Below, piece by piece: positions 4,309 through 38,845 of a stretch of DNA of 64,000 bases. Under the pieces are notes generated by a model. That model searched no databases, was not told the origin of the DNA, and saw nothing but the letters and a program-made list of their open reading frames with translations. The stretch lies in NCBI GenBank assembly GCA_965235115.1, contig OZ249438.1:8246001-8310000 (forward strand), in the 5' to 3' direction. A program made the position numbers and the translations under genes. Source of the DNA: Laetmonice hystrix. Taxonomy: Eukaryota. The stretch's first letter is position 1. Each line of letters starts with the position of its first letter.

Positions 4309-7197
4309 TAGTGTATAAAGAGACCTATGCAGGCAATTGACAAAATGCGTAACTATAAATACAAGGTGCGGTCGGGGATCCCCACAAGCCTGGAGTAGAG
4401 GATCGCAAAGTTGATATGGTGGGTCTGGTCTATTTAAAGAAGTTCACAACCTGTTCAAATGCGGTTTACTTTCTGGACCGCTTAAAAGATATGTACATGT
4501 GTTAGCTGTATACCCCTGCCCCTACCAGAAGGTTATCCAAGGGAGTTTTGGAGTTGCCCGAAATCCCGTGGAAATTTCATCTATACTCTGAAACTATGCA
4601 CTTTCATTTGCAACTTTTGGAAAGTCCCCCCTCCCCGACCAGTCATAACTACCTGCATGGCAAATCTCAAAAGCCAGAAAGTTTACACATCATTTCCTAC
4701 TATACATCTGTACCCTACTCTACCCATGATACCACCTAGATTAAAGAGTCATGGCTTGTGTTACTGGTCATGTGAGCAAAAGGAAAACTTTCGAAATTGT
4801 ATAAATAGTACTTAGCTCACGTTTTCGGCCGAGATGACAGACTTTCAGAACAAAGAAAAACGTGCCTGAATTAGACCATTCTCTGATTCACGTGGCAGAA
4901 AATGATTGGAGATAACCCGTGAGGTCATGGTCCGTGAAGGTATTGATTTGCCAACCGCAGTCTACAATATTTGTCTACGTTAAAATTGTGTTTGAAATGG
5001 GTTGCTTTGTTTCGGTTTCATGTTATTGGGAGTTACTTTTAGGCCGAGATTTCTATACTGAGGAGGGCATACACTGACAACCCGCGCCCAAACAGTGGGG
5101 TAACTTGTGACAATTAGACTTCCATATTGTTGAATTTCCGTCGCAATAAATTCGACAGATTCTAAGCCAGGATATCATGCCGTTAAGAAAAAAGCGCTGA
5201 CTTGAAACTGTGGGAAAGGATTAGAGTAGCTTATTTTAAGTATCAATTCCGTAAGAAGATTGTAAAAGATAGGCCTAACGGTCAGGAAAGTCCCGCGCAA
5301 ACAGATAAAATGAGTCCGATATCAGGGAGATAACACTGCTTTTTTATGTTTCTCTTAAAGTGAAAGTAAAATAAGTAAAACAATAATAATGCCCCTCCCT
5401 GTAAAATGACTACCTCACTGCGGGCCGAATAGTCCGGGGGTAGGGACTTACCTTTATAACGCTATGGACTGGACCTGATCACATCCGAGCAATAATATAT
5501 TTTTTTCTTACGCGTGACGTCACGGTCAGTCCCTGGCATGAGCCGAATAGCCTCATACATATAGTGCTGCCACCTGTCGATATACAACTACTAATCAAAA
5601 GTTGATGGTAAAAAGGCTCTAGCTCATAATGATGTTTCTTGTCGGACCCTCGAAGGACTTTGTGAGATTCCCTGTAAATATTCCACTGCGAATTGAAATA
5701 TTATGCTCGTCATTTGATCTCGTAAAGCATGAGGCCTACCATTATCATTATCCATTTCCCAAACTCAAGGTGATGATCTTTAATCATGTCTGCTGATCCC
5801 TCGCGCAAAATGCACAAAATGTGTGCCCCATTCATAAGTTCCCGCGATCTTGTTGGCCTATATGCCTTTGAACTACGCAGCAGGGCGGTAGAACATGAGC
5901 GGTGATGTGGTCGAGCCTCCTCATGCAGTTCGACCTTTTACGTCTGTATCATAGAGCCTTATGTACATCCGAAGTTATTTCTGAACCGGAAATTGACTCG
6001 GAAGTTCCGATTGCTCACTCTCCGCGCGTTCTCTGAAACTGACACTTTCACTCACGAATGTTCTGTCAACATGACTCCGGCTGGCAGTCGACGTGGACAC
6101 CTCGAGCTGCCTCCACCCGCTGGGTGAGGGACAGGGGGAGGGGGAGATGTTGCTCCCAGTAAATCTGAAAAAATCGCGTTTTTTGACGAGCAAGTACCCA
6201 AGTGACAGAAATATGCCATTCATGCCAAGTGACCTTCAGAAACTCGACCTGCCTCTTCCCTCGGTCATTTCTTATTCATTTGAAAGTGTCTGATTTGTCC
6301 TTGACTTTATTATCATTCTTTGTCAAAGTTTATGACTGTCGTAACTCATAGCCTACCTGCTTTCCCGCCAAAGATCGATGAAGGAAGGTCTATAGGCATA
6401 TATCGAGTAAGCCTATAGTAACTGAGTGCACTGAGACCCTAAAATAGCAGGTCCCGTGACTGAACAAGCGAGACAAATTTTAGTGCCATCCGGAATATCT
6501 CTGAAACACTGTCCAAGGGGAGCTACCCCCCCCCCCCCTTATACTAATTTTTCAAAAGTCCGGACTGTGAGAACCGGCCGGACTGGTCAGTGCCCCCCCC
6601 CCCCTTCCATCTTCACACCTTGTGTGGCCAAAAGGTGGCGCCACGATCACGATCGTTGTTTACTGTTTACTGCAGCCAGAGATGTCAACCCCGCCCTGGC
6701 CGTTCTGAGCCACGCGGGGGTCTATTGTGGCAGGACAAGTTATGGGATTACCCGTTGTTATACAAACAAAGCTCCGGCACACGTTCTGCCATCGTTCATT
6801 ACGTGCCCTTGTAGGACGTTTGAAAAAGGTGTTAATTTGACATGTTAATCGGAGAAACTGTCCACTCGTTGCCGTGGATTCCGAACAAACGTCGCCACAC
6901 AGGCCAGATCTGTTGTAACTTTTGGTTATCAGTGTAACAATTAGGAGAGAGTGAAATCACTGGTGGTCGGCCAGAACGACATATTATCATCAGAGTCACT
7001 AGAAAATTCATATTCCTCTTCATTGTCTCAATTGTATCCATGATTTATCTAGTTTAGCATGTCCTCATCCAGTCTTACTCAAAGGTTGCACAATTATTGT
7101 AGACTTCGTATTGTAGTTATTATATATCACTGTATATTCAGTTTGGGCTTAGACGTGCCACCATTTGAATAGTCCAAGCTCACAGTCGCACCCTGTA

Positions 7198-7208
7198 GTC
7201 TTCTTCTT

Positions 7209-7238
<30 letters not shown>
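7198..7238. repeat. (TTC)n microsatellite, about 13 units
   Basis: Direct reading. Confidence 0.95.
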
Positions 7239-7240
<2 letters not shown>

Positions 7241-8444
7241 GTGGGTGTCAGCATAGCTGCATCAATAGCCCCATTTACCCACTTTACCTTGTTCCTTTTT
7301 CATTTTCTTTCCTCCACTTCCAACTTCAGAAATGGTCATTGGACAAGTCGTAATTTTAAAAAGTGACTAGATGACGTCTTCTTAACTTATTAATATCTTA
7401 ATCTGCTTTCGAGTTTATACAATCTTTTTCTCAGACTAAAGGCCTGTCTCTACTTATAATAGCAAAGATAGTCTATGTCTACAAATATATGCATGGTCTA
7501 TTTCTCCGTGAGGCTTACTTGTAGACTTGCTGTCCTGTTGGCTCCATGTTCTTCTGCCTCCTCTCTGTCCAATTGGAAACAAGAAATCATAAAATGAGAA
7601 ACACGAATTAAAACACAGAATCGTAAGGTGAGGATTTGATTGAATCCGATTCCATGCCACATGTTGTAATACTAATGACCAATGAGTGTATTTCATTGCA
7701 TTGAACTCATTAACGTCTTATCCTAAATAGTGTATTCATGTAATGAGCTAATTGCCCTCTGTTTGGGCGACCAAAACAGCCGTTCTAATAATGATTATTT
7801 GATAGGGATCAGCTAATCCCTGTCAATTAGTTCACGGTTCACTGACCTGGCCCATGGGTACAGCTCCATGATGGCAGTTCTGTGTAGTGACGTCAAGTAT
7901 CGTTCACCTGAACAACTGAACAAGCTTGCTACCCCACCCCAGCCCACCCGGACCCCCCAACCCACCCGGACCCCCGCGGACATAACAATAGTATTCTTTT
8001 GTTTTATTCTGTTAAGGCCCGCCGTGCCTTTGGCCTTTCCTCTACCCCCGCCCCTTCCTTCCCATCACTGCCAAAACGTCCACTGTGGCACCTGCAGCAC
8101 TGTTTTAAGACCCCTGCCCCCACAAGACCTTCGAGTCATTCATGGGAGGAAGGCCATGGCTAACAATTACCACTGAAAACAATGGAAGGCGGATTAACTC
8201 AGACTTGGCTTTGTCACCTCTGGCCGTCCAGCGGCGTTGTTGACCAACAGTTAGCCCGGCAAAGCTCGCGCCTGTGACTTCAGCCTTCCACTGCTAGAAG
8301 CAAGGTGACAACGCCTTCCTTTGCCAGGCCCTTGCACCGCTGACCGCTGAAACAACATCCGTGCATGTCTACGTGCATAACTCCCAGTATCAGGGTCGGA
8401 ACCACACCAGTTAGAGTTCAGACTCCAAGCCACATACACGGACA

Positions 8445-8452
8445 TTTATATA
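8445..8452 (+). promoter_or_regulatory. Candidate TATA box of the homeobox gene
   Basis: TTTATATA about 120 nt upstream of the predicted ATG at 8569. Confidence 0.35.
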
Positions 8453-8568
8453 CGCCATTCGCATGATTGCAATTAGTGGTTCTCCCGATGATCCAGAGGT
8501 GCTCTCTTGAATTGCAATTCCGTAAAAATCCCAGAAGTGAGAAGTGATCCCAAAACGTCGCGACTACC

Positions 8569-8602
8569 ATGCTAGGGGTGGACGGTCACGAGGCCTATCG
8601 AG
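8569..8602 (+). CDS. Homeobox gene coding exon 1 (MLGVDGHEAYR, phase-1 end)
   Basis: ACCATGC start and strong donor GAG|GTAAGC at 8603. G+CC joins in frame to exon 2 (Ala, then MSESMY). Confidence 0.7.
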
Positions 8603-9266
8603 GTAAGCCGAATGAAATTACTTTAATCCAGATTGGAGTTTAACAAAGTGGAGAGGCACGACCGCATCCGATCTTGTCCTGCCATATCATTGCATAGCTG
8701 GCCGCAATTGAAATGTTCTGAAAGACTAAACTAACACCGAGTGCTTGCATTTTGCTTACTGTATCTTTTGAACGGAATTGTCTCTTCCAAGTTTTGTGTC
8801 TGAATGGAGTTTCAGTAGAGAACAATCGGTGATAAGCAATGAGACTTATGGGTATAACCATGTTGAACTCCCCATGTTATAACATTAATAATACGAACCC
8901 TCGCGTTCATTGGTAGAGCATCATTATTGGCAACCGACAAGGAACTCTTATAATTCTGTCAATGTATCCCGTGAAATGCAGGCCCGTAGTGGAAGAGGGG
9001 GCTAGGGGACGTCCAGTTTTGGTCATTCTTCATTGAAGGGCCAAAATCATGTAGGCCTACGTCATCTTGAAAAGGGTCTACGGGGGCTACTCTGCCTTAC
9101 ATAATTATACCTTATAGCACTCTCTTTGGAATGCCAATTATTATGGCTTTCCTTACGTAATTAACCTTTACCTGTAACATATAAAACCACCTAAACAAAT
9201 TGATTGACTGACCAAGATGACTGCCAAATAATATTTTACCCTGTTTTTATTTCGGCCCTGTTTCAG

Positions 9267-9563
9267 CCATGAGCGAATCAATGTACCCTGGCGGCCTAGG
9301 GCTTCACCATAGCAACCACCTCACATCTCACCTCGACACCCAACACCCGGGCCCTTTCCACGGTCACCCGGGGTCACTGGGTGCTAACCCCCACCCCTCG
9401 GTCTACCCCCACCAAGACTACCACCACCAGTATAAGTTAGCTGTCAACCCCATGCAGATGCCACCCGTACATGGCGGCGGTAACCTGCAGCACCAGGAGG
9501 GGCCTCTTGCTCCGCCAGACAACAGACTACAGCAGACAGAGCCCAGCTACACTCAGGACGAAT
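9267..9563 (+). CDS. Homeobox gene coding exon 2 (His/Pro/Gly/Gln-rich N-terminal region)
   Basis: Acceptor CCCTGTTTCAG| at 9266 and donor AAT|GTAAGA at 9564. 297 nt, phase 1 to phase 1; matches ORF 9269+. Confidence 0.85.
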
Positions 9564-9574
9564 GTAAGATATTT

Positions 9575-10660
9575 TCTCATGTCTGGATATAATGACCCAT
9601 GGTAATGACCCACGGAGAGTAACATGAAGTCTCTCTCTCATGTCTGGATGTAATGACCCATGGTAATGACCCACGGAGAGTAATATGAAGTCTCTCTCTC
9701 ATGTCTGGATGTAATTACCCATGGTAATGACCCACGGAGAGTAATATGAAGTCTCTCTCTCTCATGTCTGGATGTAATGACCCACGGAGAGCAATATGAA
9801 GTCTCTCTCTCATGTCTGGATATAAGGACCCATGGTAATGACCCACGGAGAGTAACATGAAGTCTCTCTCTCATGTCTGGATGTAATGACCCATGGTAAT
9901 GACCCACGGAGAGTAATATGAAGTCTCTCTCTCATGTCTGGATGTAATTACCCATGGTAATGACCCACGGAGAGTAATATGAAGTCTCTCTCTCTCATGT
10001 CTGGATGTAATGACCCACGGAGAGCAATATGAAGTCTCTCTCTCATGTCCGGATGTAATGACCCATGGTAATGACCCACGGAGAGCAATATGAAGTCTCT
10101 CTCTCTCATGTCCGGATGTAATGACCCATGGTAATGACCCACGGAGAGCAATATGAAGTCTCTCTCTCATGTCCGGATGTAATGACCCATGGTAATGACC
10201 CACGGAGAGCAATATGAAGTCTCTCTCTGTCATGTCCGGATGTAATGACCCATGGTAATGACCCACGGAGAGCAATATGAAGTCTCTCTCCCATGTCCGG
10301 ATGTAATGACCCATGGTAATGACCCACGGAGAGCAATATGAAGTCTCTCTCTCATGTCTGGATGTATTGACCCATGGTAATGACCCACGGAGAGTAATAT
10401 GAAGTCTCTCTCTCATGTCTGGATGTAATGACCCATGGTAATGACCCACGGAGAGCAATATGAAGTCTCTCTCTCATGTCTGGATGTAATCATCCATGGT
10501 AATGACCCACGGAGAGCAATATGAAGTCTCTCTCTTATGTCTGGATGTAATCATCCATGGTAATGACCCACGGAGGGTAATATGAAGTCTCTCTCTCATG
10601 TCTGGATGTAATGACCCATGGTAACGACCCACGGAGTAATAATTATGAAGTCTCTCTCTC
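9575..10660. repeat. Minisatellite, about 61-bp unit x about 18, at the start of homeobox intron 2
   Basis: Unit GTAATGACCCACGGAGAGTAATATGAAGTCTCTCTCTCATGTCTGGATGTAATGACCCATG with a variable (CT)n tract. Confidence 0.95.
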
Positions 10661-11795
10661 TATCTATATCAGAGGTCTTCGTATTTAAGGGACACACATT
10701 CGTCAGAACATATCCAAAGTTTCATAAGGGGTCATAAAACAGATCCGTTGTCAGCAGTACATAAACCTTTTTAGAAAAAAAGAGAGAACAATTGGTGCTA
10801 ATTGCGGCTCTCAGCGTCCCGGATCCACCACTGATGTTTATTTGGTCCCAACTACAGAATTCTGGTTTCATTTCCTGACCTAAGCGCACGTGTGCCCTCT
10901 GCTCACGTGATTCCGAGCCTGCGGGCCCTTAACATGTGTATAGGAATTGCAATTAACGTTTCCATCCAAGTATTTACCCGGAGCTGGTCTCGATTGACGG
11001 TGAAGATTATCGTGGACTGATCTCCTTACTCGAGTCTTTCATCTCACCATGCCTCTATACCTAACTGTCACAACTCCAGATAAGATTTCACAAAGACAGA
11101 ATGTTCAAAGTGTGTCGGTGTTCAGTGTGAAGTGTTTCACCAACATTTAGCCTTTGAAGATGGATTATTTAGGTGTGAATATTGACTGCTATGATAATAA
11201 TGTCGCACAACGGTTGTTTGTTGGTGGGCAATCAATTGACTTCCCTCCCACATCAACAACATCAGAGTGTATATACAGACACAGTTAGGACAGGGTTTGT
11301 GAAAAAAAGGCTAGGTCAACATCCGTATCAGTAGGGCCATTTTAAGCTTGATAGGTTTTCATTGTAGCACCAGTGTGACCAATTTGGTCATGATTATCGA
11401 ATGAGGGTAGATGTATATAGTCTGAATAATTGCGATGGTGTGACATTTACAGCAATAGGCCTTCACACATATTCATACACTTATACATGTGTATAGGCCT
11501 TCACAACGTATATCAGATGTCTTTGCGACACGTGTGGGGCTGCCAAATTCTGTCTTAAGTCTGGGCAGGGGCAGAAAAATATGTTTTCTAGTTTAGAACC
11601 ACCATTTATGCCAAAGTATTCATTAACAAAATGGCCACAACTGAAGTATACTGCTTTATTTTTCGCTTAGGTGGATATATAATTTGTACATTCCTTAAAC
11701 TGTGAAGCTATATGTCGATAGGACTCTATCCTGAGTGTCATGATGGCAACATTTCTCTGAGACAGATGTTAACCTTCTTGTTCTGTCCCATGCAG

Positions 11796-11962
11796 TACCA
11801 CCTCCCCCTCCCATCACCCCACCTCCGGCCAAGGAACGTTTCTCTTATACACGCTACCAACTTCACCTTCTCAACGGAATCTACACGGCAGTTCGTTATC
11901 CTAACTCAATCCAGAAACAACTCATCGCCAAGAGGGTGGGCATCACTCGCGACCAGGTCAAG
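11796..11962 (+). CDS. Homeobox gene coding exon 3 (poly-Pro plus homeodomain residues 1-46)
   Basis: Acceptor TTCTGTCCCATGCAG| and donor AAG|GTGAGA. Encodes LPPPPPITPPPAKERFSYTRYQLHLLNGIYTAVRYPNSIQKQLIAKRVGITRDQVK. Confidence 0.92.
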
Positions 11963-12196
11963 GTGAGAATTCTAACACGTCACGCCTCTCATGACACCAT
12001 GCAGTATTTTAATACATAGGCCAAAATGTATAGACGACAAGATAAAACACAACCGTCTTATATCTAGCAATCCGACCATACTAGGACATTGATTAGTTGG
12101 TTCTGTACGCTGTTTCCCAATATGAATGTTTTTGGACATCAAGCCCATTGAACCGCCTGTGAATATTAAAAATAATATTATAATGGTCTGTTTCAG

Positions 12197-13660
12197 ATTT
12201 GGTTTCAAAACAGACGCCGTAAAGACGTGATAGGACCCAAGGCAGGGCAGAAATCCAAGTCGCCACCTAGCGGCGAAGAGAATGGTGTTTGCATGGTGCC
12301 AGAAACCATCATGAAGGGCGTCTTGACCGAGCTCGAGCGGTATGGCGAGGATATGAAACAAAACAATAAAAAGAACAAAGGCAAAATCACCACCCAGCCC
12401 TCAAGAGAACGACCCAAGCCTTACGATGTAAGCCGAAAACGAGACAGATCTGTGAGTGAGGGCCGGAACGACTCGCCTGTCCAACAACAGCTGTTTTCCC
12501 TCTCCGCTCACGTGGACAACTCTAAACGAAATCAATTCGAAGATACCGAATCAATTGCTTCTTTAGAACCTTGTGAAACTATGTCGCCTCCAGCTTATAA
12601 CGCTAGTCCCGTAAGCAGCGTGTCAAGTTCTTCCAATATTAGTATCGTGTCGTCTCCACCCAGTAACAATAACACAGTGCCGACTTCGGCTCAGCTCGAC
12701 ATGGTGGCGCCACCTAATGCCATAGCACCAGGAGCGCAATTCAACGTGTTCCCGCCAGATGGCGTGCCTCCCATGTCGGAGTCCCCGTGCATCGCTCAGT
12801 CCCCACCAGCGGAGAGTTCCTTGGAGGCCAGAAGAAGGCACCAGGTGTCGCCACCTTTTTCATCCGGGGAACAACAACAGCCTACGTCACATTCGCGCCA
12901 AAGTTCCCCGGCGTCTGATCGGCAATTAACACATCAGCCGCCAGACAACACCAACCATCATCGTCAGGAATCAAACTCAGGTCACAACGTCAGTGGTTCG
13001 TCGGGGAGCCAAGGTTCTATTCGAGAGTATAGCGGTCATCCGGGAATCTTTGCGCCAATTCCATCTTACGCACATGGGGCTGCACCACACCCAAACTGGC
13101 CTCCTCCTCCTCCCCATCCCACACTGGACAAACATGCTGTAAACGCACACGCACACGCACACGCACATGCAATGCAGGCAGGTGTGCATGCTCCAAATTC
13201 TCACATGGCCACCGGTGATTTCCCCTTGTATGGCAAAGACAACACAAACGATGCACACCACTCAGCCGGGTTTGGTCAGATGAATTCCGGCCTAGGACAA
13301 CACCCACTATACCCATCATCGTATTCCCATCACCATGGTGCAATCCACACTGACCTTAGTGAACCTAGTCACCCTCATTGTGCCCCAACTGACGGCCAGT
13401 CGTTTGGCCTCAATCGAGTTTTCCCGTTTCCGATCGTGGCCGACTCTCCTCGATTGCTGTCGACGATGCCCGCCGCTTACAGCGACCCCTACAGTTCGGC
13501 GTACAAGTCGTCTGCTGTTCCCAGTTCCATGCACCCCGCCCTCTACCGGGACGCGTACCAACCGCTCCTGATTTCGACGTTCAACAACCCTTATTACGGA
13601 ATGGACAGTGCAAGCTGGCAAACTACAGCAGCCGATCGCAAAACGTTTACCAGCTTATGA
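12197..13660 (+). CDS. Homeobox gene coding exon 4 (helix 3 IWFQNRRRKDV plus long S/P/H/Q-rich C-terminus)
   Basis: Acceptor TCTGTTTCAG| at 12196, phase 0, in frame with ORF 12227-13660. The spliced CDS is 34+297+167+1464 = 1962 nt (653 aa plus stop). Confidence 0.92.
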   Translation: MWFQNRRRKDVIGPKAGQKSKSPPSGEENGVCMVPETIMKGVLTELERYGEDMKQNNKKNKGKITTQPSRERPKPYDVSRKRDRSVSEGRNDSPVQQQLFSLSAHVDNSKRNQFEDTESIASLEPCETMSPPAYNASPVSSVSSSSNISIVSSPPSNNNTVPTSAQLDMVAPPNAIAPGAQFNVFPPDGVPPMSESPCIAQSPPAESSLEARRRHQVSPPFSSGEQQQPTSHSRQSSPASDRQLTHQPPDNTNHHRQESNSGHNVSGSSGSQGSIREYSGHPGIFAPIPSYAHGAAPHPNWPPPPPHPTLDKHAVNAHAHAHAHAMQAGVHAPNSHMATGDFPLYGKDNTNDAHHSAGFGQMNSGLGQHPLYPSSYSHHHGAIHTDLSEPSHPHCAPTDGQSFGLNRVFPFPIVADSPRLLSTMPAAYSDPYSSAYKSSAVPSSMHPALYRDAYQPLLISTFNNPYYGMDSASWQTTAADRKTFTSL

Positions 13661-13909
13661 CAACAGGAATAGGCATATGTCTAAATATGGGTCGATGTGC
13701 TTTCCAAGGTATCTGTCCTTAGACTTTGCTAAATCTTATAGGCCCGTTGTGCTATAATAGGGCCTTCAGCTAGACATTGGAGGGGGCCTTTGATGTTACC
13801 TCAGATCCACTGGCATACATGCACCGTCCATGATACACACATTAAAATTACACAAAATTGTTGAATACTATTATTTTTTGCTTGTTTTGTTGTTGTTGTA
13901 TATAAAACC

Positions 13910-14192
13910 TAAAACCGCCTACAGACAGAAACACACGTTTTTACCTGTCCCCTCTGATCTAAAACCGCCTACAGACAGAAACACACGTTTTTACCTGTCC
14001 CCTCTGATCTAAAACCGCCTACATACAGAAACACACGTTTTTACCTGTCCCCTCTGACCTAAAACCGCCTATACAGACAGAAACATACGTTTTTACCTGT
14101 CCCCTCTGATCTAAAACCGCCTACAGACCGAAACACACGTTTTTACCTGTCCCCTCTGATCTAAAACCGCCTACAGACAGAAACACACGTTT
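13910..14192. repeat. Minisatellite, 50-bp unit x about 5.6, 250 nt after the homeobox stop codon
   Basis: Unit TAAAACCGCCTACAGACAGAAACACACGTTTTTACCTGTCCCCTCTGATC. Confidence 0.95.
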
Positions 14193-15673
14193 GCACACAT
14201 TTCGTCATCTCAGCACACACCATACCACGCTCCAATTGGCTCATTATAGGCGCCATTCCAAGTTTTCTCTGGAAGCTGTCTATTATAGAAATGGTGCCTT
14301 CTAAATAATGTGAGGCATTGTCAATGTGTTCTGTTCAAACGATTTGAAAAAAGAAATTGAGTTCGTGACCTTTCTTACTTATAACCTACTTTACGCATGT
14401 TACAAAGTTCTAAGCTAGGATTTGGAACCTTGCCCCCTTTAATCCGTCACGTCCTTGCATACCGGCCCTATAGTTTACTGTCAGCTCTATTTTTCTCCAT
14501 GCCTGCTGGATTCAATTGTTACCCTATCCTTACAGTGGTCGGGGTGAGACACAGTAAGCTGTCCACTAAGTGGACACAGCATGGCAGCTGTTTCCCTGGT
14601 TGTCAACACTGTGACATTCTATAGCGTACAGAAGGGTAACTAACACTCGCGGGCCTTTACTCACACTGAGGGCGTGCCTGCATGAGTTAACTTACAACCT
14701 ATACTTCAAAAAAAAACCCACAGGATATGCCCTTTATACAGGGCGCGACGGATCCAGTATTATTCAACAAATTTGCACTTTCCCCAAAATTCCCATGGAG
14801 CAAGCCATTAGGAATGCGTCCATTCACAGTCGCTGGCGTCAAGAGACAAACATGCAGTCAAAAAACATTTTCAACACGTTTTCATAACTTAGGCCTAGAT
14901 TATGAACTTCGATCCAATGATGCGGTCTAGGCCAACTCTTGAGTATAAATAAGGATATAGCCTATTTCTCATCCCAACGAATTCGTGATATTGGAGGGAT
15001 TTAGGTGTGAATTTGAGTTATTTGTCACCTTTCGATAACTTCACATCGTGACAGAGCTCGTTCAACTCAGAATGCCCTGACTGAGTCACCCATAATACGG
15101 CCTACGGTAGCTGTCAGGTGATGGCGAATAATCAATTCGTGTAGCGCCACCCACTGCGGGCAATCCACCTTTACAGCTGACGTCAATGTGACTAAGAGTT
15201 GGGCCTACTCGTCGGTAGAAATCATTGCCGCCAGCCCGCCAGGTATATTATATATGGTCCCTCTATGGGGGCGGTGTTTGGGATATATGTGGTTTATTAG
15301 TCAGCCAGTAATTAGGCCTATAGGGGAATAGTGGGACTTTGACCACACTCACGCGTCTAGCCGCCTGCACGAGCCGGAATGAATGAAGGAGGAAGTAGGT
15401 CATAGAATGGTTTAGTTCCCACCACCACCAGTGCGAGAGGAAATACCCAGCAACTACTAACTGTGGCTCCCTGGGATTCTGCCTCACGGAGTCCCACTCG
15501 GCGTCAGTGCTTGACGTCTTTATGTTGTCCTCACTGTGGGCCTATGTTTCTACCTCATGACAGAACATAATCAAGAGTAGGCCTGTACTTAGGACATACA
15601 GTATAGGCCTAGGCCTGGTGCGAAGGTTCTACCAATGATAACAGGTGGTTGTGAAACATTTTTTCATTGTTTA

Positions 15674-15937
15674 GATTGCCAACAACAAGGCAACGTGTGC
15701 AGACGATCGGGACTCACTTTGACGAGTCTCGTGATTGTGTGGATTACCAACAACAAGGCAGCGTGTGCAGACGATCGGGACTCACTTTGACGAGTCTCGT
15801 GATTGTGTGGATTACCAACAACAAGGCAACGTGTGCAGACGATCGGGACTCACTTTGACGAGTCTCGTGATTGTGTGGATTACCAACAACAAGGCAGCGT
15901 GTGCAGACGATAGGGACTCACTTTCACGAGTCTCGTG
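15674..15937. repeat. Minisatellite, 68-bp hairpin-forming unit x about 4, just upstream of the reductase ATG
   Basis: Units start at 15674, 15742, 15810 and 15878. Core CGGGACTC-ACTTTGAC-GAGTCTCG. Confidence 0.95.
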
Positions 15938-16019
15938 AATCGATACCACATCACCGACAGTAGCCTATAGGCCTAGGACGATAGTGAGGGAGAAGATCGA
16001 GAGATAAGCTGATCACACC

Positions 16020-17000
16020 ATGGCCGAGTTGAAGGAGCGAGGTTGGAGTCCATCTTCCCCAGCCTTCCCCATCAACAATAACACCACAAAGGACGAGGTA
16101 CAACTGGACATGTCGGGGGCCGCCACCGGGGATGAGGGTTACCGGAACGGCCAACCTTACGGCACCACCACGGCCACCGATACGGCCGTGGGCTGGGGAC
16201 CGGCTGGGACCGGCGGACCCAGAGCTAGCACCGCCACCAGGGCCGGTAGAGCCAAGGGGTGTACCTGTAACCGCCACGGCTGTGGGCCAATACTGGCCAG
16301 CGGCCTGGCATACTTCGGAGCGGCCCTGATGTTTCTATTCAGCGTCAACTTTGCATCGCTGCCAAAAGCGCCGTTTCCAGTAATCGGGAATGCGTTACCC
16401 CAGACATACTGGCTTGTGTCGGATGAAGCGATCTTGATTCCGATGATAGCTTGGGGCGTGCATTATCTGCGCAGGTTTGGGGAGGTGCTTTTTGTTCATG
16501 ACTACCGAAGATCCATGCCGTGTGGGGAGTCGATCGGAGCGTCCGTTTATTACTGGGGGTTTGGATTCTGGATTGGCTACTCGGTGAACTTCAAGCTTGG
16601 GTACTTGACCCCCACCTGGCCTTTCCTGGCGCCTGGCCTTATCCTGTTTGTCGTGGGAGAAGTAGGCAACTGTGCGGTCCACCTGGCCCAGCGTCAACTG
16701 CGAAGAAGGCCAGGAAGCGAGTCTGTGATGTCACCTTCAGGAAACCAGCATGTTATCCCGACTGGTTTCCTGTTTAAATACGTGTCCTGCCCAAACTACA
16801 CGTTTGAGATCATTACCTGGATCGGGTTCGGCCTGATCGCGTTTACATTACCCGCCGCACTGTTTCTTATAGCCTCAATAACAACTTTGGTCATCTACGC
16901 TCACAAAAAACACAAAGGCTACAAGGCAGAATTCGACGGGGAGGATGGAAGGCCGCTTTATCCACCCAAACGGAAAGCCCTAATTCCATTCATATTCTAA
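16020..17000 (+). CDS. TECR-like / steroid 5-alpha-reductase family (3-oxo-5-alpha-steroid 4-dehydrogenase domain) membrane enzyme, intronless, 326 aa
   Basis: ACCATGG Kozak with an in-frame stop at 16005. TECR/Tsc13-type motifs HYLRRFGEVLFVH, YYWGFGFWIGY, GNCAVHLAQRQLR, FKYVSCPNYTFEI and KKHKGY...YPPKRKALIPFIF; several hydrophobic helices. Confidence 0.9.
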   Translation: MAELKERGWSPSSPAFPINNNTTKDEVQLDMSGAATGDEGYRNGQPYGTTTATDTAVGWGPAGTGGPRASTATRAGRAKGCTCNRHGCGPILASGLAYFGAALMFLFSVNFASLPKAPFPVIGNALPQTYWLVSDEAILIPMIAWGVHYLRRFGEVLFVHDYRRSMPCGESIGASVYYWGFGFWIGYSVNFKLGYLTPTWPFLAPGLILFVVGEVGNCAVHLAQRQLRRRPGSESVMSPSGNQHVIPTGFLFKYVSCPNYTFEIITWIGFGLIAFTLPAALFLIASITTLVIYAHKKHKGYKAEFDGEDGRPLYPPKRKALIPFIF

Positions 17001-18503: not shown

Positions 18504-18916
18504 TCATTGCGATCAAACACCAAAACTTCCGTATCCGTCATTGTGATCAAACAGGAAAACTTTTGTATCCTTCATTGTGATCAAACAGGAAAACTTCTGT
18601 ATCCTTCATTGTGATCAAACAGGAAAACTTCTGTATCATTCATTGTGATTAAACACCAAAACTTCTGTATCCTTCATTGTGATCAAGCAGGAAAACCTCT
18701 GTATCCTTCATTGTGATAAAACAGGAAAACTTCTGTATCATTCATTGTGATTAAACACAAAAACTTCTGTATCCTTCATTGTGATTAAACACAAAAACTT
18801 CTGTATCCTTCATTGTGATTAAACACAAAAACTTCTGTATCCTTCATTGTGATCAAACAGGAAAACTTCTGTATCCTTCATTGCGATCAAACACCGAAAC
18901 TTGTGTATCCTTCATT
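18504..18916. repeat. Minisatellite, 34-bp unit x about 12
   Basis: Unit TTGTGATCAAACAGGAAAACTTCTGTATCCTTCA. Confidence 0.95.
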
Positions 18917-25370: not shown

Positions 25371-27166
25371 ATGGCAGCGGGATCCATGAGGTGTCAGTTA
25401 GGCCGGCCTGGATCAGTCAGTTTGCTGACCGGCCTCTTGTTGATAGCGCTGCTCCAGGCCTACAATGGGTTGGCGAGGGCGGAAGAAGCGGCGGCTCCGG
25501 CCGAGGTGGCCAAGGAGGAGGACGAGGAAGTGCTAGTGGGCGATAAGAACTGTACAGCGTTAGCGTCACAATGCAAATCGGGATACATGCTACCAATGTG
25601 GACCCCTCAGGGCAACCTGAGTGTTGGCGACAAAGCAGCGCGTGCCACTGTCTATTTTGCTGCGATGGTGTTCATGTTTTTAGGTGTTTCCATCATTGCG
25701 GATCGTTTCATGGCAGCTATAGAAGTGATCACATCCAAAGAACGAGAAGTGACTATTAAAAAACCGAATGGTGAAACGGCCGTTGTGAGTGTCAGAATAT
25801 GGAATGAAACAGTGTCCAACTTAACCCTCATGGCTCTGGGTTCGTCGGCTCCAGAAATCTTGTTGTCTGTTATTGAGATCATTGGTAATAAATTCGAGGC
25901 GGGAGACTTGGGGCCCAGTACGATCGTAGGTAGTGCAGCCTTCAACCTTTTCATCATCATTGGTTTATGCATCTACGTCATCCCCGATGGCGAAGTGCGA
26001 AGAATTAAACATCTGCGAGTGTTCTTCATCACCGCAAGTTGGAGTATATTCGCCTACCTATGGATGTACTTGATTATCTCCGTCTTCTCACCCGGAGAGG
26101 TCGAGGTTTGGGAAGGTATTCTAACCTTCTTCTTCTTCCCTGCCACAGTCATCACGGCATACATCGCTGATCGCAAGATCTTCTTCGGCAACTTTCTGTC
26201 TAAGCGCTATAGAGCAAGCAAGCACAAATCTGTCGTGATCACAGAGGGCGATATGGAACTCGGGGAGAAAAATCACGTCGGCGATGATGTCATCTTCAAG
26301 GGACTCGACTCAGAGGACGTAGAAATCCGAGAGTTTGAGCGTCACCGGAAAGACTTCATCGAGATCTTGCGTGACTTGAGAAAGAAACACCCGAACGTCG
26401 ACATGCGCACTCTGGAAGAAATGGCGGAGTTGGAAGCGATGAATCGTGGTCCCAAAAGTCGTGCTTTCTATCGCATTCAGGCAACGAGAAAGTTAACCGG
26501 AGGGGGGGCAGTCATCAAGAAGTCTAAAATCGAACGGAAATCAAGCCTGCAGGATGTTAAGGTCGACCTGCCAGAGGACGATAGCATTACGCGGATCTTC
26601 TTCGAACCTGGACACTACACGGTCATGGAGAACGTGGGAACCTTTGCCCTGACCGTCTCAAGGGTCGGCGGAAACTTAGAGAACACAGTTTACGTAGACT
26701 ACAGGACCGAGGATGGCACCGCGAATGCCGGCTCTGACTACGAATATGCGGAAGGAACCTTGGTATTCCACCCGTCGGAGCAACACAAACAATTCTCGAT
26801 CACCATCATCGACGACGACATCTTCGAGGAAGATGAGCACTTCTACGTGCGCCTCTCAAACATCAGGGTCGGTGACGCCGACGGCATGTTCACCAGCAGC
26901 TCACAGGAGTCGAAGGCGCAGCTCGCCAACCCTTCCATGGCCACCGTCATGATTCTGGATGATGATCACGCCGGTATTTTCCACTTTGAGCAGACGGAGC
27001 TGTCGCTATCCGAATCTGTGGGAGAGGCAGCTGTCAAAGTTTGCCGTTCATCGGGAGCTCGTGGCCAGGTGAAGCTACCCTATCGCACAGTGGAAGGCTC
27101 AGCTAAAGGGGGCAAGGATTACGAGGACTCCGTCGGGGAACTGGTCTTCGAGAACGACCAAACTGA
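25371..27166 (+). CDS. SLC8A: Na+/Ca2+ exchanger (NCX, SLC8 family), giant first coding exon; gene incomplete in this window
   Basis: Signal peptide; alpha-1 repeat [16 protein letters not shown] and [14 protein letters not shown]; XIP-like basic segment; Calx-beta CBD1 ([21 protein letters not shown]) and the start of CBD2. Exon 25322-27166 is bounded by TTTCATCTTGCAG| and GA|GTGAGT (phase 2); the ORF-track stop at 27170 is intronic. Confidence 0.97.
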
Positions 27167-29144
27167 GTGAGTACAACCTGTTTCACATTCCGGGTTTCTC
27201 AGGATTCAAGTACCAGAGTATATACATCGACACTGGAATAGAAACTTTAGCCTCACTGAGTAAAATAGTTGCAAAGACTCATAGTTTTATAGTGAGCAAA
27301 GTTTGAAAAGGGTCAAATCATCAAAGTAGTTTTGATGCTGGAACAGTGCTAAAGAGCAGGCTTCGTATGGGTGGCTGAGGTCATGAAAAGTCGTGGCATT
27401 TCACGTCGACGAAATGCCAGCCTGGAAATAATGAAAAACAAATACTTGGAAATAGGCTTGGCCATCTTGAAGCTGATTTGAAACATATTTATGACCATTC
27501 TAACTCATGACAACATATCGACTCCACAACGTCTTGATGACCTTACTGGTAGTTCACGGGAAAGGTTCTTTTACATGACTCAGCAGTATACTTACCCTAT
27601 AGTACGGTGTCGTCAACCATCTGGAAAGAAAAAGTTGAGTCTTTGGTTTCAGAGTTAGCTAAAAATTTGGCTTTGTCAGCGTATATATTGGGTCATAAAA
27701 AGCTTAGCTCATTAACAGACACAGAGCAAGATCAGGCGTAAAGAAGGCCAGACATACAGTAACTGTTTACATTCTAAACCTATCACGTGTACGTAGTGGG
27801 TACAAGTTGTATGACCGCTTTCCTAGAAAGCTAAAAAACCGAGTCAAATTTTTCCTGTGGCATATTTTCTCAATCAGCTAGTTTCGTCTGCGAAAGTGGA
27901 GGTTGTTAGTATCAGTTCATCCCGTTACATTGATAGGGATCTACCAAAATACAAAATACATGCGCTTTACTTAATCAGTTAGCTCAGATAATACAGCAGT
28001 CATAAATTGTTTGTTTCTCTGGTTTACAGTCAAAGTGCTCATTATGACAAGAAAACTAATATTAGCGTGACAAGTCAGTGTAGGTGACGCAACGGAATGT
28101 TGCCGTAATTTCTCTGGTTGGTTCATTGCTATGAAGTTTTCGGAATGTTCGACCAGTGCGCACTGCCAAACTTTGCTGTTGTGAGTTTTAGAAAAAATGC
28201 GAATTACACTAATTGCTGTGAACATGGTCCTCCCCGTGTTCTCAGTCCCTCTGAATGACTCCATGAACCATGCCACAGTGGTACCAACCACACAAGTTTC
28301 CTTTGATCCATAACTTGACCCAAGCAAAGTTTTCAATCACAACATTCGTATTTGTACCCATATATCACATAATGATGAGGGAGCAGTCGTTATTATCCTT
28401 TTCATGTTGACAGTTTTAGAGTTAATGGAGCATGTATTGATTTCCTTATTGATTCCATTTACAATATTGTCCTTCCCTAACCCCTGTCCTGACGCTCAGA
28501 TCTATACTGTCAGTCGACCTCTATTGACCTTTGCTAGACAGATGATTTACAAGTTTCTTGAGTGCTACCCACATGTAGAAGTTGTAGGTGGGAGGTGGGA
28601 GGGGGTCAACCCCCTGTCAGTAAGGAACCAAGTGTTCTCAATCGATCCGAACTAGTAAATATAAACAATCACTGCTGTGGGTGGTATTCTCTCCTGTTTG
28701 ACAGGTTTGTAAACTAACCTCCTGTAGAAATATGATTGTCCAAGGAAGTTTCAAAAACATTGGAGCTGGGATTGCATGACACGTAGATCTTTTTGGGGAG
28801 GTTAGTTGATTGATGCAATGTTCTACTATCTTTAAGGTCATACCATTTCATGTGCTAGTTGATAACCGAACGGTGGGACGGTTACTTACTGTACGTGGGT
28901 ACTCTCTTCATCTTCCACGGATGAGGTCTCAAATAGAGAACTACACATGGCTGGTCATGCTCGGAACTTGTCAGTGGGGATATGTCGGGGTAAAACTTTT
29001 ACATGGCGATGGGCAGTGTTTGTCCTGATGACTACACGTGTGCTGACCAGCTGTCGAGCAGATGGCATACATGTATATTAGTGGGGGTCTATTCATATAG
29101 CCCTGATAGCCGATCCTAACCAAACAGGAGAAATGGATGTCCAG

Positions 29145-29494
29145 CTGGCGACCAACTCGCCTGGTTTGGTGTGGTGGTGGTGGTGTGGTGGAAACTGGCG
29201 ACCAACTCGCCTGGTTTGGTGTGGTGGTGGTGGTGTGGTGGAAACTGGCGACCAACTCGCCTGGTTTGGTGTGGTGGTGGTGGTGTGGTGGAAACTGGCG
29301 ACCAACTCGCCTGGTTTGGTGTGGTGGTGGTGGTGTGGTGAAAACTGGCGACCAACTCGCCTGGTTTGGTGTGGTGGTGGTGGTGTGGTGTAAACTGGCG
29401 ACCAACTCGCCTGGTTTGGTGTGGTGGTGGTGGTGTGGTGAAAACTGGCGACCAACTCGCCTGGTTTGGTGTGGTGGTGGTGGTATGGTGGAAA
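29145..29494. repeat. Minisatellite, 50-bp GT-rich unit x 7
   Basis: Unit GGCGACCAACTCGCCTGGTTTGGTGTGGTGGTGGTGGTGTGGTGGAAACT; starts at 29147 and every 50 nt after. Confidence 0.97.
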
Positions 29495-32400
29495 CGAAAA
29501 AAAACCCCACCCCTCTGATCCCCGGATCATGCGTTTTGTCATGATTACTGGATATAAAGTTAAAGGAATAAAAAACGGAGTTTAAGGGAGTTAAGGGAGT
29601 CCTTCTTTGGGGTTGAGCTTTACGGAAAGGTTTACAGAGCCGTCCATTCAAGTGTACAGTGTGATGAAGATAGGTTTATTTAGGACCTCCATTGAGTACT
29701 TCTAGTTCTCTCATGTTAAACGATGCATGGCATGATTCGTACGGTTAGGGTAGGACTATAATGTGATGGGTGGTAGATCTGTTAATTACTTAATGCGTTT
29801 CAGGTATCGACCTGCCCAAGGAAGGGATTCATGCGTGAACTTGTAAGCGGCCACCTTTTGACAAAAAGGTCAATCAAATTATGTTGGCTAGGATTCATGT
29901 TTACACAGCATGCTGTCAGGGTTGGCAGCTTGAACGTGTTTCAGTGCTGGATGGGACATAACATGGGGCGAGGTCTTGATGTAATGGTTTAGAAATTACC
30001 TTTCTGTGTGATCATATATTTACATCCGAGTTTGGGGGAGGTGATCCTTGCAAACAAAATACATGTATCACACAACAGGCACGTGTCCAACATTTTCAGC
30101 AGGGGAGGGGTCAGAAAATCTTTAAAAATTATGAGGCGCGATTTCCCGCCATTTAGGGGGCATTTTAGGGCATTATATTTTTGTGGATTCATCGCTCAAC
30201 GGGTTCAAAACGGCGGGAATGCTTCGAACGTGCTATCTATGCTCTGGGGGGAGTGAGGGGGTCTGGACTCTCTGGACCCCCCCCCCCCCACGACACAAGA
30301 AACAACAAAAAAAACTGGGGAAAAGTTAGAGACGGTGCATACAGGAAACGGATTGGCCTATATTGGTATCTCTGCATGACATCCGTTATGGCCTGTCTTG
30401 TTTTCCATTCGTTCATCAAATGGTCTGTCTGTTTCCCGTAACATGCTGGAGTGTGGTCACACTATTAATTTTCGTACATTGCATTAAATGGTCTGCCTTG
30501 ATTACCGTCCATTACAACAAGCTGGCTTTATTTTCTGTAAATGAAATGGATGCCCATTTCGCATGTGTGCATCGAATGGCTTATCGTCTTTTGCAGCACA
30601 ATAATAGTTCAGTTAAAGTAGTGTTTGGTACCCCCAGTTCCATCTTGTAATGGTTCCTCTAGCCGCTACGATTATACATGTACTTTCTGTCGGTCTATTC
30701 TGGCAACCTTCGGCGGTTTCTCTTCGGCAATGTTCGGCGGTTTCCGGCGATTGAGAAACACCTCTGGTACATTAGCTTCACCCCCTAATCAGGGAAAAAC
30801 GAAGGGGCGCGGATTCTGCAGGCAGTGAACAGTCTACAATATAGTCCACTAGGGAATTTAAAATTTTCGCCAACGAATTCCTATGTTACATCGATTATGA
30901 ATTGTGGTTCTTATGTACAGCATCTACCAGCAAGATTTGATAATGTTCAGGTATTGGAATGGCATTAATACGCTCTATTATGTTTGAAGCCATCTGGCAA
31001 TCTTCGGCAGGTGCTCGTTGGCAATTTCCGTCACCAGAATTTCCGACAGCGGTCGCCAAACTGCAATAGACAGTGACTGGTCTCTTGCCTAACAGACGCG
31101 TCCCCTATGTTAGGACAGGCATTGGGTAATTTCACTTGTCAGAAATCCGACAAGCGGAAGGAAGTTGCTCAAACTTCCACAGCAGAAAACTTCCGCTTCC
31201 ATTGCGTTGGTCAGCGTCACCTGGGAGTGATCGATCTCTGGTCGGAGAGTGGGCAACATGGCCATGCGTGATGCAGGCCGTATAGCCTGGTGTAAGGGCC
31301 CATGACACTATATCTACACCTAGAAACGCGAGAACATGTAACATTTGTATTGTAAAAAGACTGACGAAAATATCTGTATCTTCTTGGAGAAATCCGGAGG
31401 ATATGGATCTACCATCGACGTTTGTGTCCATGTTTTTGATGAGCCAATCACAGCGCGCACTTCGATTAGTCTTCGCCAGTCTCTACATCAATAGAGCTGG
31501 GGACCAGTCTACAAACTAAAAAGAAAGACTAGTGAGCCACAATCCACCAGAGGTAATTTTATCGCCGCTTGGGGGCCAGAGTGGTCTATCTCTTCAGATG
31601 TTGCATCTTTATGGTCCTTCTATTTCAGCTGCCCCAAACCTTTGTAAAGTTTATGAGACCTTTAAAGACTGCACTCTGTGTCCTAGTGATATTTCTGGTG
31701 TGCTCTCATTTTCAGTTACCCCAAGTTGTTTTCCCAGATAGAGTTGTGGTCTAAAGTTACTCGTTCTCTTGATTCATTTTCCGCTATCCGCTGTTTTTGC
31801 AAACATCGACCTGCCACGAATACCGTGTTGGGTTCCTGGTAGTTGACCGGTCTGCCGATAGAGGTCACTGTTTAAGCTGGTCCTCAAGGTGAGTCGGCCG
31901 AGGAGTGGCAGATATTGCTCATCCGATCCGGGGAGCAAGGTGGACATGATAAATAAATGCCACCTCGGTCTTGGTTTGGTCTATGTGGTGGCTTGTTGTT
32001 GGAGGGTACGTGTTGACTGGGCGGTCGGTCGCCCCTGGGTACTTTCTTCATGTTAAGATATCCACGAAATCATCAAGGTAAGCGGTTAGCAGTGGAACTA
32101 CGTGGACATGGATACATTTTATATGGGGGAGGTCTAGGGACCGGGTTTCACGGGTTAGTGTTAACTTCAGGGCTAGGACTATTGAAAGATTTCGACTTAA
32201 TCTCCCCAAGGTTTGGTGGAGAAGTTTCCATAGGTGATGTATCCACTGGGCTGCCTGTAGCCGCCCAGCTCGCCGCCCGTGCCCCTCCAGCCTCGCCCTA
32301 TTTTAAGAAAGCGTCATCTTACCTTGGCCCCAGGAAGAGGATGCACTGGTACCCAGATCCAGCGGCAGCTCCCTTGACCATGTGTATGCCGACTGGAATC

Positions 32401-38700: not shown

Positions 38701-38845
38701 GAGCCTGATTCAAGAAAGCATGTTGAGCTTGTGGTTTTTTCTCTGTAGTAGCTGTTATCCTATTTGTGCGTGTTGCGAACCCCAGCCTGGAGGAGGCGGG
38801 GAGGGTGGGGGGCGTCTGTGCTGTGTGATGGTTGGAAGATAGGAA

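What the first reader, a model, noticed from the sequence alone, without database searches (positions are those of the whole stretch)
8569..13660. Hidden, highly divergent homeobox gene not assignable by eye to a standard family
Seen: splicing four exons with canonical sites and consistent phases gives 653 aa. The homeodomain is PAKERFSYTRYQLHLLNGIYTAVRYPNSIQKQLIAKRVGITRDQVK|IWFQNRRRKDVIGP. It keeps R5, Q12, L13, L16, Y25, P26, W48, F49, Q50, N51 and R53. It has atypical Y8, N17, G18, Y20, K31 and I40, and lacks the basic residues 2-3 stretch and the usual basic tail after position 55. Established: an intron between codons 46 and 47 is typical of the PRD class, whereas a KIWFQN helix 3 looks ANTP-like. 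Inference: a lineage-restricted or unclassified PRD-like family. The lophotrochozoan Lopx family is the first candidate to test, from memory only and unverified.
Basis: partly seen in the sequence, partly recalled or inferred. Interest (0 to 1): 0.8.

Follow-up and report, generated by a model that had tools for sequence, protein, structure and literature searches.

The report
Ordinary Lopx homeobox gene orthologue
The four-exon homeobox gene is real, but it is this (probably annelid) genome's single copy of Lopx, a homeobox family found only in lophotrochozoans and named in 2018, so it is an expected gene and not a new family.

Summary
Exons 8569-8602, 9267-9563, 11796-11962 and 12197-13660 (+) splice through GT-AG sites into an open 653-aa frame. 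Exon 3 scores as a Pfam Homeodomain.

The homeodomain is 47-51/60 identical to published annelid and mollusc Lopx homeodomains and 49/60 to Lottia 169764, a published Lopx. It is at most 34% identical to 63 other homeodomains of the same genome. A tree gives the Lopx clade 99/99 support.

A profile of the region after the homeodomain found only 54 cluster representatives among 1.84 billion. Every one that carries a homeodomain is Lopx-type, and two are accessions the 2018 paper lists as Lopx.

No RNA run holds the locus, so the junctions rest on comparison:
- A syntenic relative (L001) has the same four exons, the same intron phases 1/1/0 and the same MLGV start.
- Annotated Lineus and Haliotis genes also have four coding exons, with the intron at homeodomain position 46/47.
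- dN/dS across the homeodomain is 0.04.

A neighbouring gene places the organism among annelids.

What this adds is minor: the 46/47 intron is conserved across Lopx, and there are several conserved motifs in disordered sequence. The class (PRD or other) stays unresolved and the function is untested.

The parts
8569..8602 (+). Coding exon 1: ATG plus 11 codons and 1 nt (MLGVDGHEAYR), donor GAG|GTAAGC, phase 1
   Evidence: It is the only match to the N-terminal pattern M-[ILM]-x-[VIL]-[DE] in the 9.27 kb upstream of exon 2. The syntenic relative L001 has MLGVE with a phase-1 GTAAGT donor about 890 nt upstream of its exon 2. Mollusc Lopx proteins start MIQLD, MIQID, MLEVD, MIEVD or MMQLD. Annotated Lineus and Haliotis genes have a 15-19 aa first coding exon; Lineus intron 1 reads as phase 1 (GAT split G|AT), and Haliotis intron 1 reads the same way but its splice frame was not worked through. 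There is no nucleotide-level conservation and no RNA evidence.
9267..9563 (+). Coding exon 2: His/Pro/Gln-rich low-complexity N-terminal region; holds an in-frame ATG at 9269
   Evidence: Acceptor Y-tract-AG|CCATG and donor GAAT|GTAAG are the same in window and L001. The L001 four-exon model stays open through the equivalent exon. No Pfam domain.
9575..10660 (.). 61-nt minisatellite (about 18 copies) inside intron 2; not part of the gene product
   Evidence: Tandem Repeats Finder. It shows no significant similarity to the exon 2 end plus donor: 174 of 500 shuffles reach the score.
11796..11962 (+). Coding exon 3: proline-rich linker plus homeodomain positions 1-46 (11825-11962); donor AAG|GTGAGA, phase 0
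   Evidence: Pfam Homeodomain E 7.4e-7. 76% nucleotide identity to L001 9357-9541. dN/dS 0.04 against L001.
12197..12238 (+). Homeodomain positions 47-60 (IWFQNRRRKDVIGP): recognition helix with I47, Q50, N51, R53
   Evidence: Direct reading. The stretch IWFQNRRRKD is found in seven of the eight first hits; P0003 starts downstream of it. Later hits vary slightly (VWFQNRRRKD in P0180, P0203, P0211; IWFQNRRRKE in P0196).
12197..13660 (+). Coding exon 4 (487 aa plus TGA): end of the homeodomain and a long disordered tail with conserved Lopx motifs
   Evidence: Open frame. Eight homologues found with this exon alone. The profile of this region finds only Lopx proteins.
12293..12385 (+). Motif 1, MVPxxxMxxVxxELxRY, followed by a basic cluster KKNKGK (possible nuclear localisation signal; inference)
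   Evidence: Conserved in all nine aligned sequences; P, V, E and L are invariant.
12692..12718 (+). Motif 2, QLDMVAPPN
   Evidence: D-M-x-x-P-P-N is invariant in nine sequences.
13412..13462 (+). Motif 3, NRVFPFPxVAD..LLS
   Evidence: P-F is invariant and R, V, P are at least 90% conserved in 22 sequences.
13544..13657 (+). Motif 4, YRDxYQPLLISxxNNPYYG, and the C-terminal end [YF]-T-x-L
   Evidence: Conserved in 22 sequences. AlphaFold2 gives no secondary structure for the last 89 residues, mean pLDDT 59.5, so these look like short linear motifs and not a fold.

Best explanation
This is the single-copy orthologue of Lopx ('lophotrochozoan only homeobox', Barton-Owen et al. 2018; the oyster gene was first listed as Cgi_Hbx_2 by Paps et al. 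2015) in a lophotrochozoan genome, most probably an annelid. It has four coding exons and encodes a 653-aa nuclear transcription factor. Shown here: a 60-aa homeodomain split by a phase-0 intron at 46/47, family membership, strong purifying selection, and conserved motifs before and after the homeodomain. Inferred from general homeodomain knowledge: helix 3 (I47, Q50, N51, R53) and the N-terminal arm (K3, R5) bind a TAAT-core site. Also inferred: the conserved short motifs in the otherwise disordered tail (MVP..EL.RY, DMxxPPN, RVFPFP, YQPLLISS..NPYY, terminal YTxL) are docking sites for partner proteins, and the KKNKGK cluster is a nuclear localisation signal. Its biological role is untested. 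The only published functional hint is that it is expressed in Spirobranchus operculum-regeneration transcriptomes.
For: Gene model: open 653-aa frame with GT-AG introns and a Pfam Homeodomain hit.

Family:
- The homeodomain is 51/60 identical to Platynereis Lopx, 49/60 to Crassostrea and Lottia, 47/60 to Spirobranchus and 44/60 to Capitella A. These were counted by hand against supplement file 9 of PMC6118893.
- By script it is 52/60 to L001, 49/60 to Lottia and Haliotis and 48/60 to Pomacea.
- The best of 63 other homeodomains of the same genome reaches 15/44, or 34%.
- P0006 is LOTGIDRAFT_169764, which is the paper's Lottia Lopx.
- Tree: the Lopx clade has 99/99 support on a stem of 2.0 changes per column and lies outside the ANTP-type clade, itself 99/99.
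- The post-homeodomain profile A1 finds 54 of 1.84e9 representatives. Every hit that reaches back to a homeodomain has a Lopx-type one.
- Named hits include Biomphalaria XP_013064818 and Mizuhopecten XP_021359506, both on the paper's Lopx list, plus Lineus, Aplysia, Elysia, Nucella, Mya and Potamilus.

Copy number: one in the genome.

Architecture: the same four exons, phases and MLGV start in L001, and four coding exons with the 46/47 intron in Lineus and Haliotis.

Selection: dN/dS 0.04 over the homeodomain.

Taxon: the neighbouring NCX gene's best named hits are all lophotrochozoans, and it groups with the four named annelids at SH-aLRT 95.
Against: - No RNA evidence for any junction; no RNA run holds the locus.
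- Exon 1 rests on a 5-residue motif plus conserved architecture.
- The published annelid Lopx sequences were compared by hand from the supplement text, not placed in my tree. The tree's outgroups are this genome's own unlabelled homeodomains, many cut at position 46.
- DNA-binding specificity, nuclear localisation and motif function are inferences.
- The annelid assignment rests on one gene tree.
Confidence: 0.93

Rival explanations
1. The same Lopx gene, but translation starts at the ATG at 9269 in exon 2. The reader's exon 1 would then be wrong or non-coding, giving a 641-aa protein from three coding exons plus an unknown 5' UTR exon.
For: ATG 9269 is in frame and lies 2 nt after the acceptor, in the context AG|CCATGA. 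L001 has AG|CCATGG at the same place. Exon 1 shows no nucleotide conservation with L001. There is no RNA data.
Against: The pattern M-[ILM]-x-[VIL]-[DE] occurs once in the 9.27 kb upstream, exactly at 8569, with a good phase-1 donor. L001 has MLGVE with a phase-1 GTAAGT donor. Mollusc orthologues start with the same pattern, and annotated Lineus and Haliotis genes have a short coding first exon.
Confidence: 0.12
2. A very divergent member of a canonical PRD family (Otx/ceh-37, Unc4, Nobox, Esx), as the automatic names of its relatives suggest.
For: Relatives are named ocelliless-like, NOBOX-like, OTX1-like, ESX1, OTX5-like and unc-4 homolog. One automatic name is non-PRD (proboscipedia-like). 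The closest solved homeodomains are PRD class: DUX4, aristaless, OTX2, CRX, ceh-37, at 33-42 bits. The gene shares the 46/47 intron.
Against: It has Q50, not the K50 of Otx. It is at most 34% identical to any sampled homeodomain of its own genome, which has its own Otx-, Unc4-, Rax- and Alx-like genes. It forms a separate 99/99 clade. The tail motifs are found in no other family among 1.84e9 representatives. Barton-Owen et al. reached the same conclusion.
Confidence: 0.03
3. A new homeobox family distinct from Lopx, or a decaying gene copy.
Against: 78-87% homeodomain identity to most published Lopx members (73% to Capitella A; the divergent Lingula sequence only 25/60, or 42%). Intact frame, single copy. 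dN/dS 0.04.
Confidence: 0.02

Closest known systems
Lopx (LOPhotrochozoan only homeobox), Barton-Owen, Szabo, Somorjai & Ferrier 2018, PMC6118893; oyster member first listed as Cgi_Hbx_2 / CGI_10016179 by Paps et al. 2015, PMC5322547
   Same: The homeodomain signature ER[FL]SYTRYQL.LLNGIY..[VI]RYPN..QKQLIAKRVGITR[DE]QVKIWFQNRRRKD. The conserved C-terminal motifs. The lophotrochozoan host. One copy per genome. Direct retrieval of published members (Lottia 169764, Biomphalaria XP_013064818, Mizuhopecten XP_021359506).
   Different: Nothing that affects membership. Local substitutions are A2, K3, H14, T21, A22 and I29. The N-terminal region is His/Pro-rich and lacks the acidic run (DDDDE) that precedes the mollusc homeodomains. 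The paper does not discuss intron positions; here the 46/47 intron and the four-exon 1/1/0 structure are seen across annelid-type, nemertean and gastropod members.
PRD-class homeobox genes (for example Otx/ceh-37, aristaless/Alx, Unc4)
   Same: Phase-0 intron between homeodomain codons 46 and 47. Y25-P26. They are the best-scoring solved homeodomains. Lopx falls outside the ANTP-type clade.
   Different: Helix 3 reads QVKIWFQNRRRK, which is ANTP-like, and not RVQVWFQNRRAK. N27 replaces D27. There is no basic tail after position 55. No paired domain, OAR or octapeptide was found by Pfam. There is no supported grouping with any PRD family. The 46/47 intron also occurs in two ANTP-type genes of this genome (L055, L059).
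Hopx
   Same: According to PMC6118893, Hopx is the only PRD-class family from which the Lopx clade was not separated in the published tree.
   Different: Not compared here, because no Hopx sequence was fetched. The paper calls Hopx 'highly divergent'. Any link could be long-branch attraction.

Membership tests
Lopx | Homeodomain groups with the published Lopx sequences and apart from the PRD and ANTP families | tested here: met
   47-51/60 identity to Platynereis, Crassostrea, Lottia and Spirobranchus Lopx, and 44/60 to Capitella A, by hand from the supplement. 48-52/60 to P0006-8 and L001 by script. At most 34% to 63 paralogues. Clade support 99/99. Caveat: the published annelid sequences are not in my tree.
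Lopx | [quoted passage not shown] 6b of PMC6118893) | tested here: met
   RVFPFP..A[DE]PP.MLSS and YQPLLISS..NPYY plus the terminal YTxL are present in the window protein and in 21 relatives. The profile of the tail hits only Lopx-type proteins. The figure is not held, so which of these blocks the paper shows could not be checked.
Lopx | Searches from this gene retrieve named published members | tested here: met
   Lottia LOTGIDRAFT_169764 and Biomphalaria XP_013064818 and Mizuhopecten XP_021359506/OWF47443 are all on the paper's Lopx list.
Lopx | Host is a lophotrochozoan | tested here: met
   The best named hits of the neighbouring NCX gene are all lophotrochozoans. It groups with the four named annelids at SH-aLRT 95. 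Every named Lopx-tail hit is a mollusc or a nemertean.
PRD class | Intron between homeodomain codons 46 and 47 | tested here: met
   Present in the window, L001, Lineus and Haliotis. Implied in P0001, P0002, P0004, P0005, P0181, P0192, P0197 and P0201, whose open frames run in from a CAG acceptor directly before IWFQ. It is not exclusive: the ANTP-type L055 and L059 break at the same site.
PRD class | Supported phylogenetic grouping with PRD families | tested here: inconclusive
   Lopx sits in an unresolved polytomy with the PRD-type, LIM-type and other homeodomains and is excluded only from the ANTP-type clade. The published analysis left it unclassified.
Otx / ceh-37 | Lysine at homeodomain position 50 and the Otx-type homeodomain | tested here: not met
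   The window has Q50. About 30% identity to Otx homeodomains by hand. The genome's own K50 Otx-like genes (L018, L024-31) are distant in the tree.
ANTP class | Grouping with Hox/NK-type homeodomains | tested here: not met
   A 99/99 branch separates 29 ANTP-type homeodomains of this genome from Lopx, despite the ANTP-like KIWFQN helix 3.

The most novel reading that the evidence does not exclude
Lopx descends from a PRD-class ancestor, with the phase-0 46/47 intron retained in annelid-type, nemertean and mollusc members. Its five conserved short motifs, set in a disordered protein, would form a docking platform for partner proteins specific to lophotrochozoans. That would make it a clade-specific regulatory module and not just an orphan homeodomain. 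Neither point is in the 2018 description, and neither is excluded here.
Probability: 0.3. Interest if true: 0.3.

Novelty: already known. Interest (0 to 1): 0.15.

Why it matters
It matters little beyond annotation. The gene should be labelled Lopx. The misleading automatic names its orthologues carry (ocelliless-like, NOBOX-like, OTX1-like, ESX1, proboscipedia-like, unc-4 homolog) should not be copied to it.

There are two modest additions to the published description:
- A conserved four-exon structure with intron phases 1/1/0 (phases read for the window, L001 and Lineus) and the homeodomain intron at 46/47. This is a character in favour of a PRD-class origin, though not a decisive one.
- A set of conserved motifs: the N-terminal M-L-x-V-D and four blocks plus the C-terminal end after the homeodomain. 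These give concrete targets for testing how this functionally unstudied, clade-restricted transcription factor works.

Tried and rejected
- RNA support. The look-up of sequencing runs (kind rna) returned three runs of one study, none on record as RNA. Their sizes (518-600 million letters, close to the 627-Mb genome) suggest DNA contig sets. Read laying was therefore not used, and the junctions remain untested by RNA.
- Nucleotide conservation of exon 1. blastn of window 5000-16000 against L001 aligns only exon 3 and parts of exon 4. Exon 1 was supported only later, by the peptide-pattern scan.
- tblastn of the model against L001 did not find exon 2, which is low-complexity and diverged. It was located through open frames and conserved splice sites.
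- Fold of the C-terminal module. AlphaFold2 with 22 sequences gave mean pLDDT 59.5, pTM 0.19 and no secondary structure. No fold search was run, and the region is read as disordered motifs.
- Tight Lopx-NCX linkage as a family trait. It is present in the window and in L001, but NCX is not within 10 kb in Lineus or Haliotis. Only same-chromosome linkage is suggested, by equal contig lengths.
- Minisatellite in intron 2 seeded by the exon 2 donor: no significant similarity, with 174 of 500 shuffles reaching the score.
- Intronless ORF 16020-16997 as a taxon marker: its hits were mostly unnamed. NCX was used instead.
- A full tree with the published PRD and Lopx alignment was not built, because that would have meant pasting many sequences from the supplement into a script. 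Identities to those sequences were counted by hand.


Full report
**Observation.** I read the region and spliced the four proposed exons by script. Exons 8569-8602, 9267-9563, 11796-11962 and 12197-13660 give 1962 nt, 653 codons and a TGA stop. All introns are GT-AG, with phases 1, 1 and 0. The quoted homeodomain is encoded exactly as written, with positions 1-46 at 11825-11962 and positions 47-60 at 12197-12238. Exon 3 alone passes Pfam's Homeodomain threshold at E 7.4e-7, 29.3 bits against 22.9. Exon 2 and exon 4 have no Pfam domain.

**What it is.** A database search with exon 4 alone found eight relatives. Three are full-length annotated mollusc proteins: Lottia LOTGIDRAFT_169764, Pomacea 'ocelliless-like' and Haliotis 'NOBOX-like'. 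They have nearly the same homeodomain and share several blocks after it.

Barton-Owen et al. 2018 (PMC6118893) define Lopx as a strongly supported clade of genes that pipelines mislabel as ceh-37/Otx. It has a family-specific C-terminal motif and was left 'unclassified'. Their supplement lists Lotgi1|169764 as Lottia Lopx and gives the homeodomains.

Counted by hand against those sequences, the window homeodomain is:
- 51/60 identical to Platynereis Lopx
- 49/60 to Crassostrea and Lottia
- 47/60 to Spirobranchus
- 44/60 to Capitella A
- 25/60 to the aberrant Lingula sequence
- about 30% identical to Otx

By script it is 52/60 identical to the syntenic relative L001 and 48-49/60 to the three mollusc proteins. 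The best of 63 other homeodomains sampled from the same genome reaches 15/44, or 34%. In a maximum-likelihood tree the five Lopx sequences form a 99/99 clade on a long stem, outside a 99/99 clade of ANTP-type homeodomains.

A profile of the region after the homeodomain only (alignment A1) was run against 1.84 billion cluster representatives. It returned just 54 proteins, and every one that reaches back to a homeodomain has the Lopx type. Named members include Biomphalaria XP_013064818 and Mizuhopecten XP_021359506, both on the paper's Lopx list. Others are Lineus ('unc-4 homolog'), Aplysia, Elysia, Nucella, Mya and Potamilus. All are lophotrochozoans. The gene is single-copy in its 627-Mb genome.

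**Host.** The neighbouring Na/Ca-exchanger gene (25371-27170) has only lophotrochozoan best hits with names: Lineus 76%, Capitella 75%, Paralvinella and Ridgeia 74%, molluscs 65-72%, Lingula 67%. In a one-gene tree it falls in a group with all four named annelids at SH-aLRT 95. So the organism is a lophotrochozoan, most probably an annelid. Lopx is already described in annelids.

**Gene model without RNA.** No RNA run holds the locus, so I tested the model by comparison.

L001 is an unnamed ENA assembly whose NCX is about 90% identical. It carries Lopx followed by NCX, as the window does. It has:
- an exon 3 homologue with the same acceptor and an AAG|GTAAAG donor after K46, and exon 4 beginning at IWFQ
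- an exon 2 candidate with the same AG|CCATG acceptor and GAAT|GTAAG donor
- a first exon MLGVEDVFTPIS with a phase-1 GTAAGT donor

Together these give an open 716-aa frame with phases 1/1/0, 46% identical overall to the window protein.

The pattern M-[ILM]-x-[VIL]-[DE] is shared with the mollusc N-termini. It occurs exactly once in the 9.27 kb upstream of the window's exon 2, at 8569. Annotated Lineus and Haliotis genes also have four coding exons: a 15-19 aa first exon and the homeodomain intron after position 46.

Four further database ORFs (P0001, P0002, P0004, P0005) and four representatives (P0181, P0192, P0197, P0201) run from intron sequence through a CAG acceptor straight into IWFQ. 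This implies the same intron in those species.

Between the window and L001, nucleotide similarity is confined to coding exons. dN/dS over the homeodomain is 0.04, with dS saturated near 2. The gene is therefore functional and the four-exon model is well supported. Exon 1 is its weakest part.

**How it probably works.** Shown: a canonical three-helix homeodomain by sequence. Its closest solved relatives are PRD-class domains (DUX4, aristaless, OTX2, CRX, ceh-37) at 33-42 bits per domain, with engrailed and Dlx close behind.

Inferred from general homeodomain knowledge: R5 (with K3) contacts the minor groove, and I47, Q50 and N51 in the major groove read a TAAT-core site.

After the homeodomain come five conserved blocks:
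- MVPxxxMxxVxxELxRY with a basic KKNKGK cluster
- QLDMVAPPN
- NRVFPFPxVAD..LLS
- YRDxYQPLLISxxNPYYG
- a terminal [YF]TxL

They sit in otherwise fast-evolving Ser/Pro/His-rich sequence. AlphaFold2 predicts no structure for the last 89 residues, with mean pLDDT 59.5. I therefore read them as short linear motifs for partner binding and nuclear import. This is inference only. No function has been published beyond presence in Spirobranchus regeneration transcriptomes.

**Class.** In this genome some forty homeodomain matches stop at profile position 46, and those fetched are PRD-type by sequence. Two ANTP-type homeodomains, L055 and L059, break at the same point and lie inside the ANTP-type clade. 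The intron therefore favours a PRD origin but does not prove one. My tree leaves Lopx in the unresolved non-ANTP part, which agrees with the published 'unclassified' status.

**Verdict.** The gene is an expected orthologue of a named family in a taxon where that family is known. The new points are minor: intron and exon architecture conserved across phyla, several motifs where the paper shows one, and the N-terminal motif.

Noticed in passing
window 9575-10660 (intron 2 of Lopx): A 61-nt minisatellite of about 18 copies starts 12 nt after the exon 2 donor. Other notes on this genome describe minisatellites seeded by splice junctions. Here the unit shares only ATGTAA with the junction, and 174 of 500 shuffles reach that score.
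   Followed up: yes
window 16020-17000 (+): An intronless 326-aa ORF with a 3-oxo-5-alpha-steroid 4-dehydrogenase / TECR-type domain (Pfam E 4e-27) lies between Lopx and NCX. The equivalent interval of L001 has no such gene. Close copies (61-78%) are all unnamed. Named hits are patchy and distant: an octocoral at 45%, a red alga at 41%, a trypanosome at 33%. It could be a lineage-specific retrogene or an acquired gene.
   Followed up: partly
window 25371-27170 (+) and downstream: This is the large first coding exon (599 aa) of a Na/Ca exchanger (NCX/SLC8), 86-90% identical to unnamed relatives. Lopx and NCX are adjacent in the window and in L001. In Haliotis, Lineus, Mya and Nucella they are only on the same chromosome or contig, judged by equal contig lengths.
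   Followed up: partly
G000:C4:22895291-22932197 (loci L018, L024-L031): At least 13 tandem copies, about 3-4 kb apart, of a gene with an uninterrupted K50 Otx-like homeodomain inside 294-439-aa open frames. Eight of them have identical homeodomains. This looks like a recent lineage-specific expansion.
   Followed up: no
G000:C4:18747796-18823889 (loci L060, L069): At least 14 tandem copies, spaced about 3.3 kb apart, of a homeodomain exon ending at position 46. It resembles the spiralian PRD-V clade (pattern ...DPYPDIHLRERLADDIGVSEARVQ).
   Followed up: no
G000:C21:19387711-20632749: A run of about a dozen Hox-type homeodomains on one strand over about 1.25 Mb, presumably the Hox cluster. At least 141 homeodomain matches were found genome-wide, which is a lower bound.
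   Followed up: no
P0174 and P0211 (Nucella lapillus); Capitella Lopx A/B in PMC6118893: Some species carry two Lopx-type genes. One Nucella copy (P0211) has a clearly more divergent homeodomain. Lopx orthologues carry at least seven different misleading automatic names.
   Followed up: no
window 13909-14192, 15666-15938, 18504-18916, 29145-29495, 35108-35715, 38842-39394, 44911-45244, 49697-49941, 52050-52792, 53760-54117, 54726-55508: The window is unusually rich in minisatellites, with units of 23-84 nt and 3-19 copies at 91-99% identity for all but the composite 53760-54117 array (70% as a 46-nt period, 97% as its 23-nt sub-arrays).
   Followed up: no
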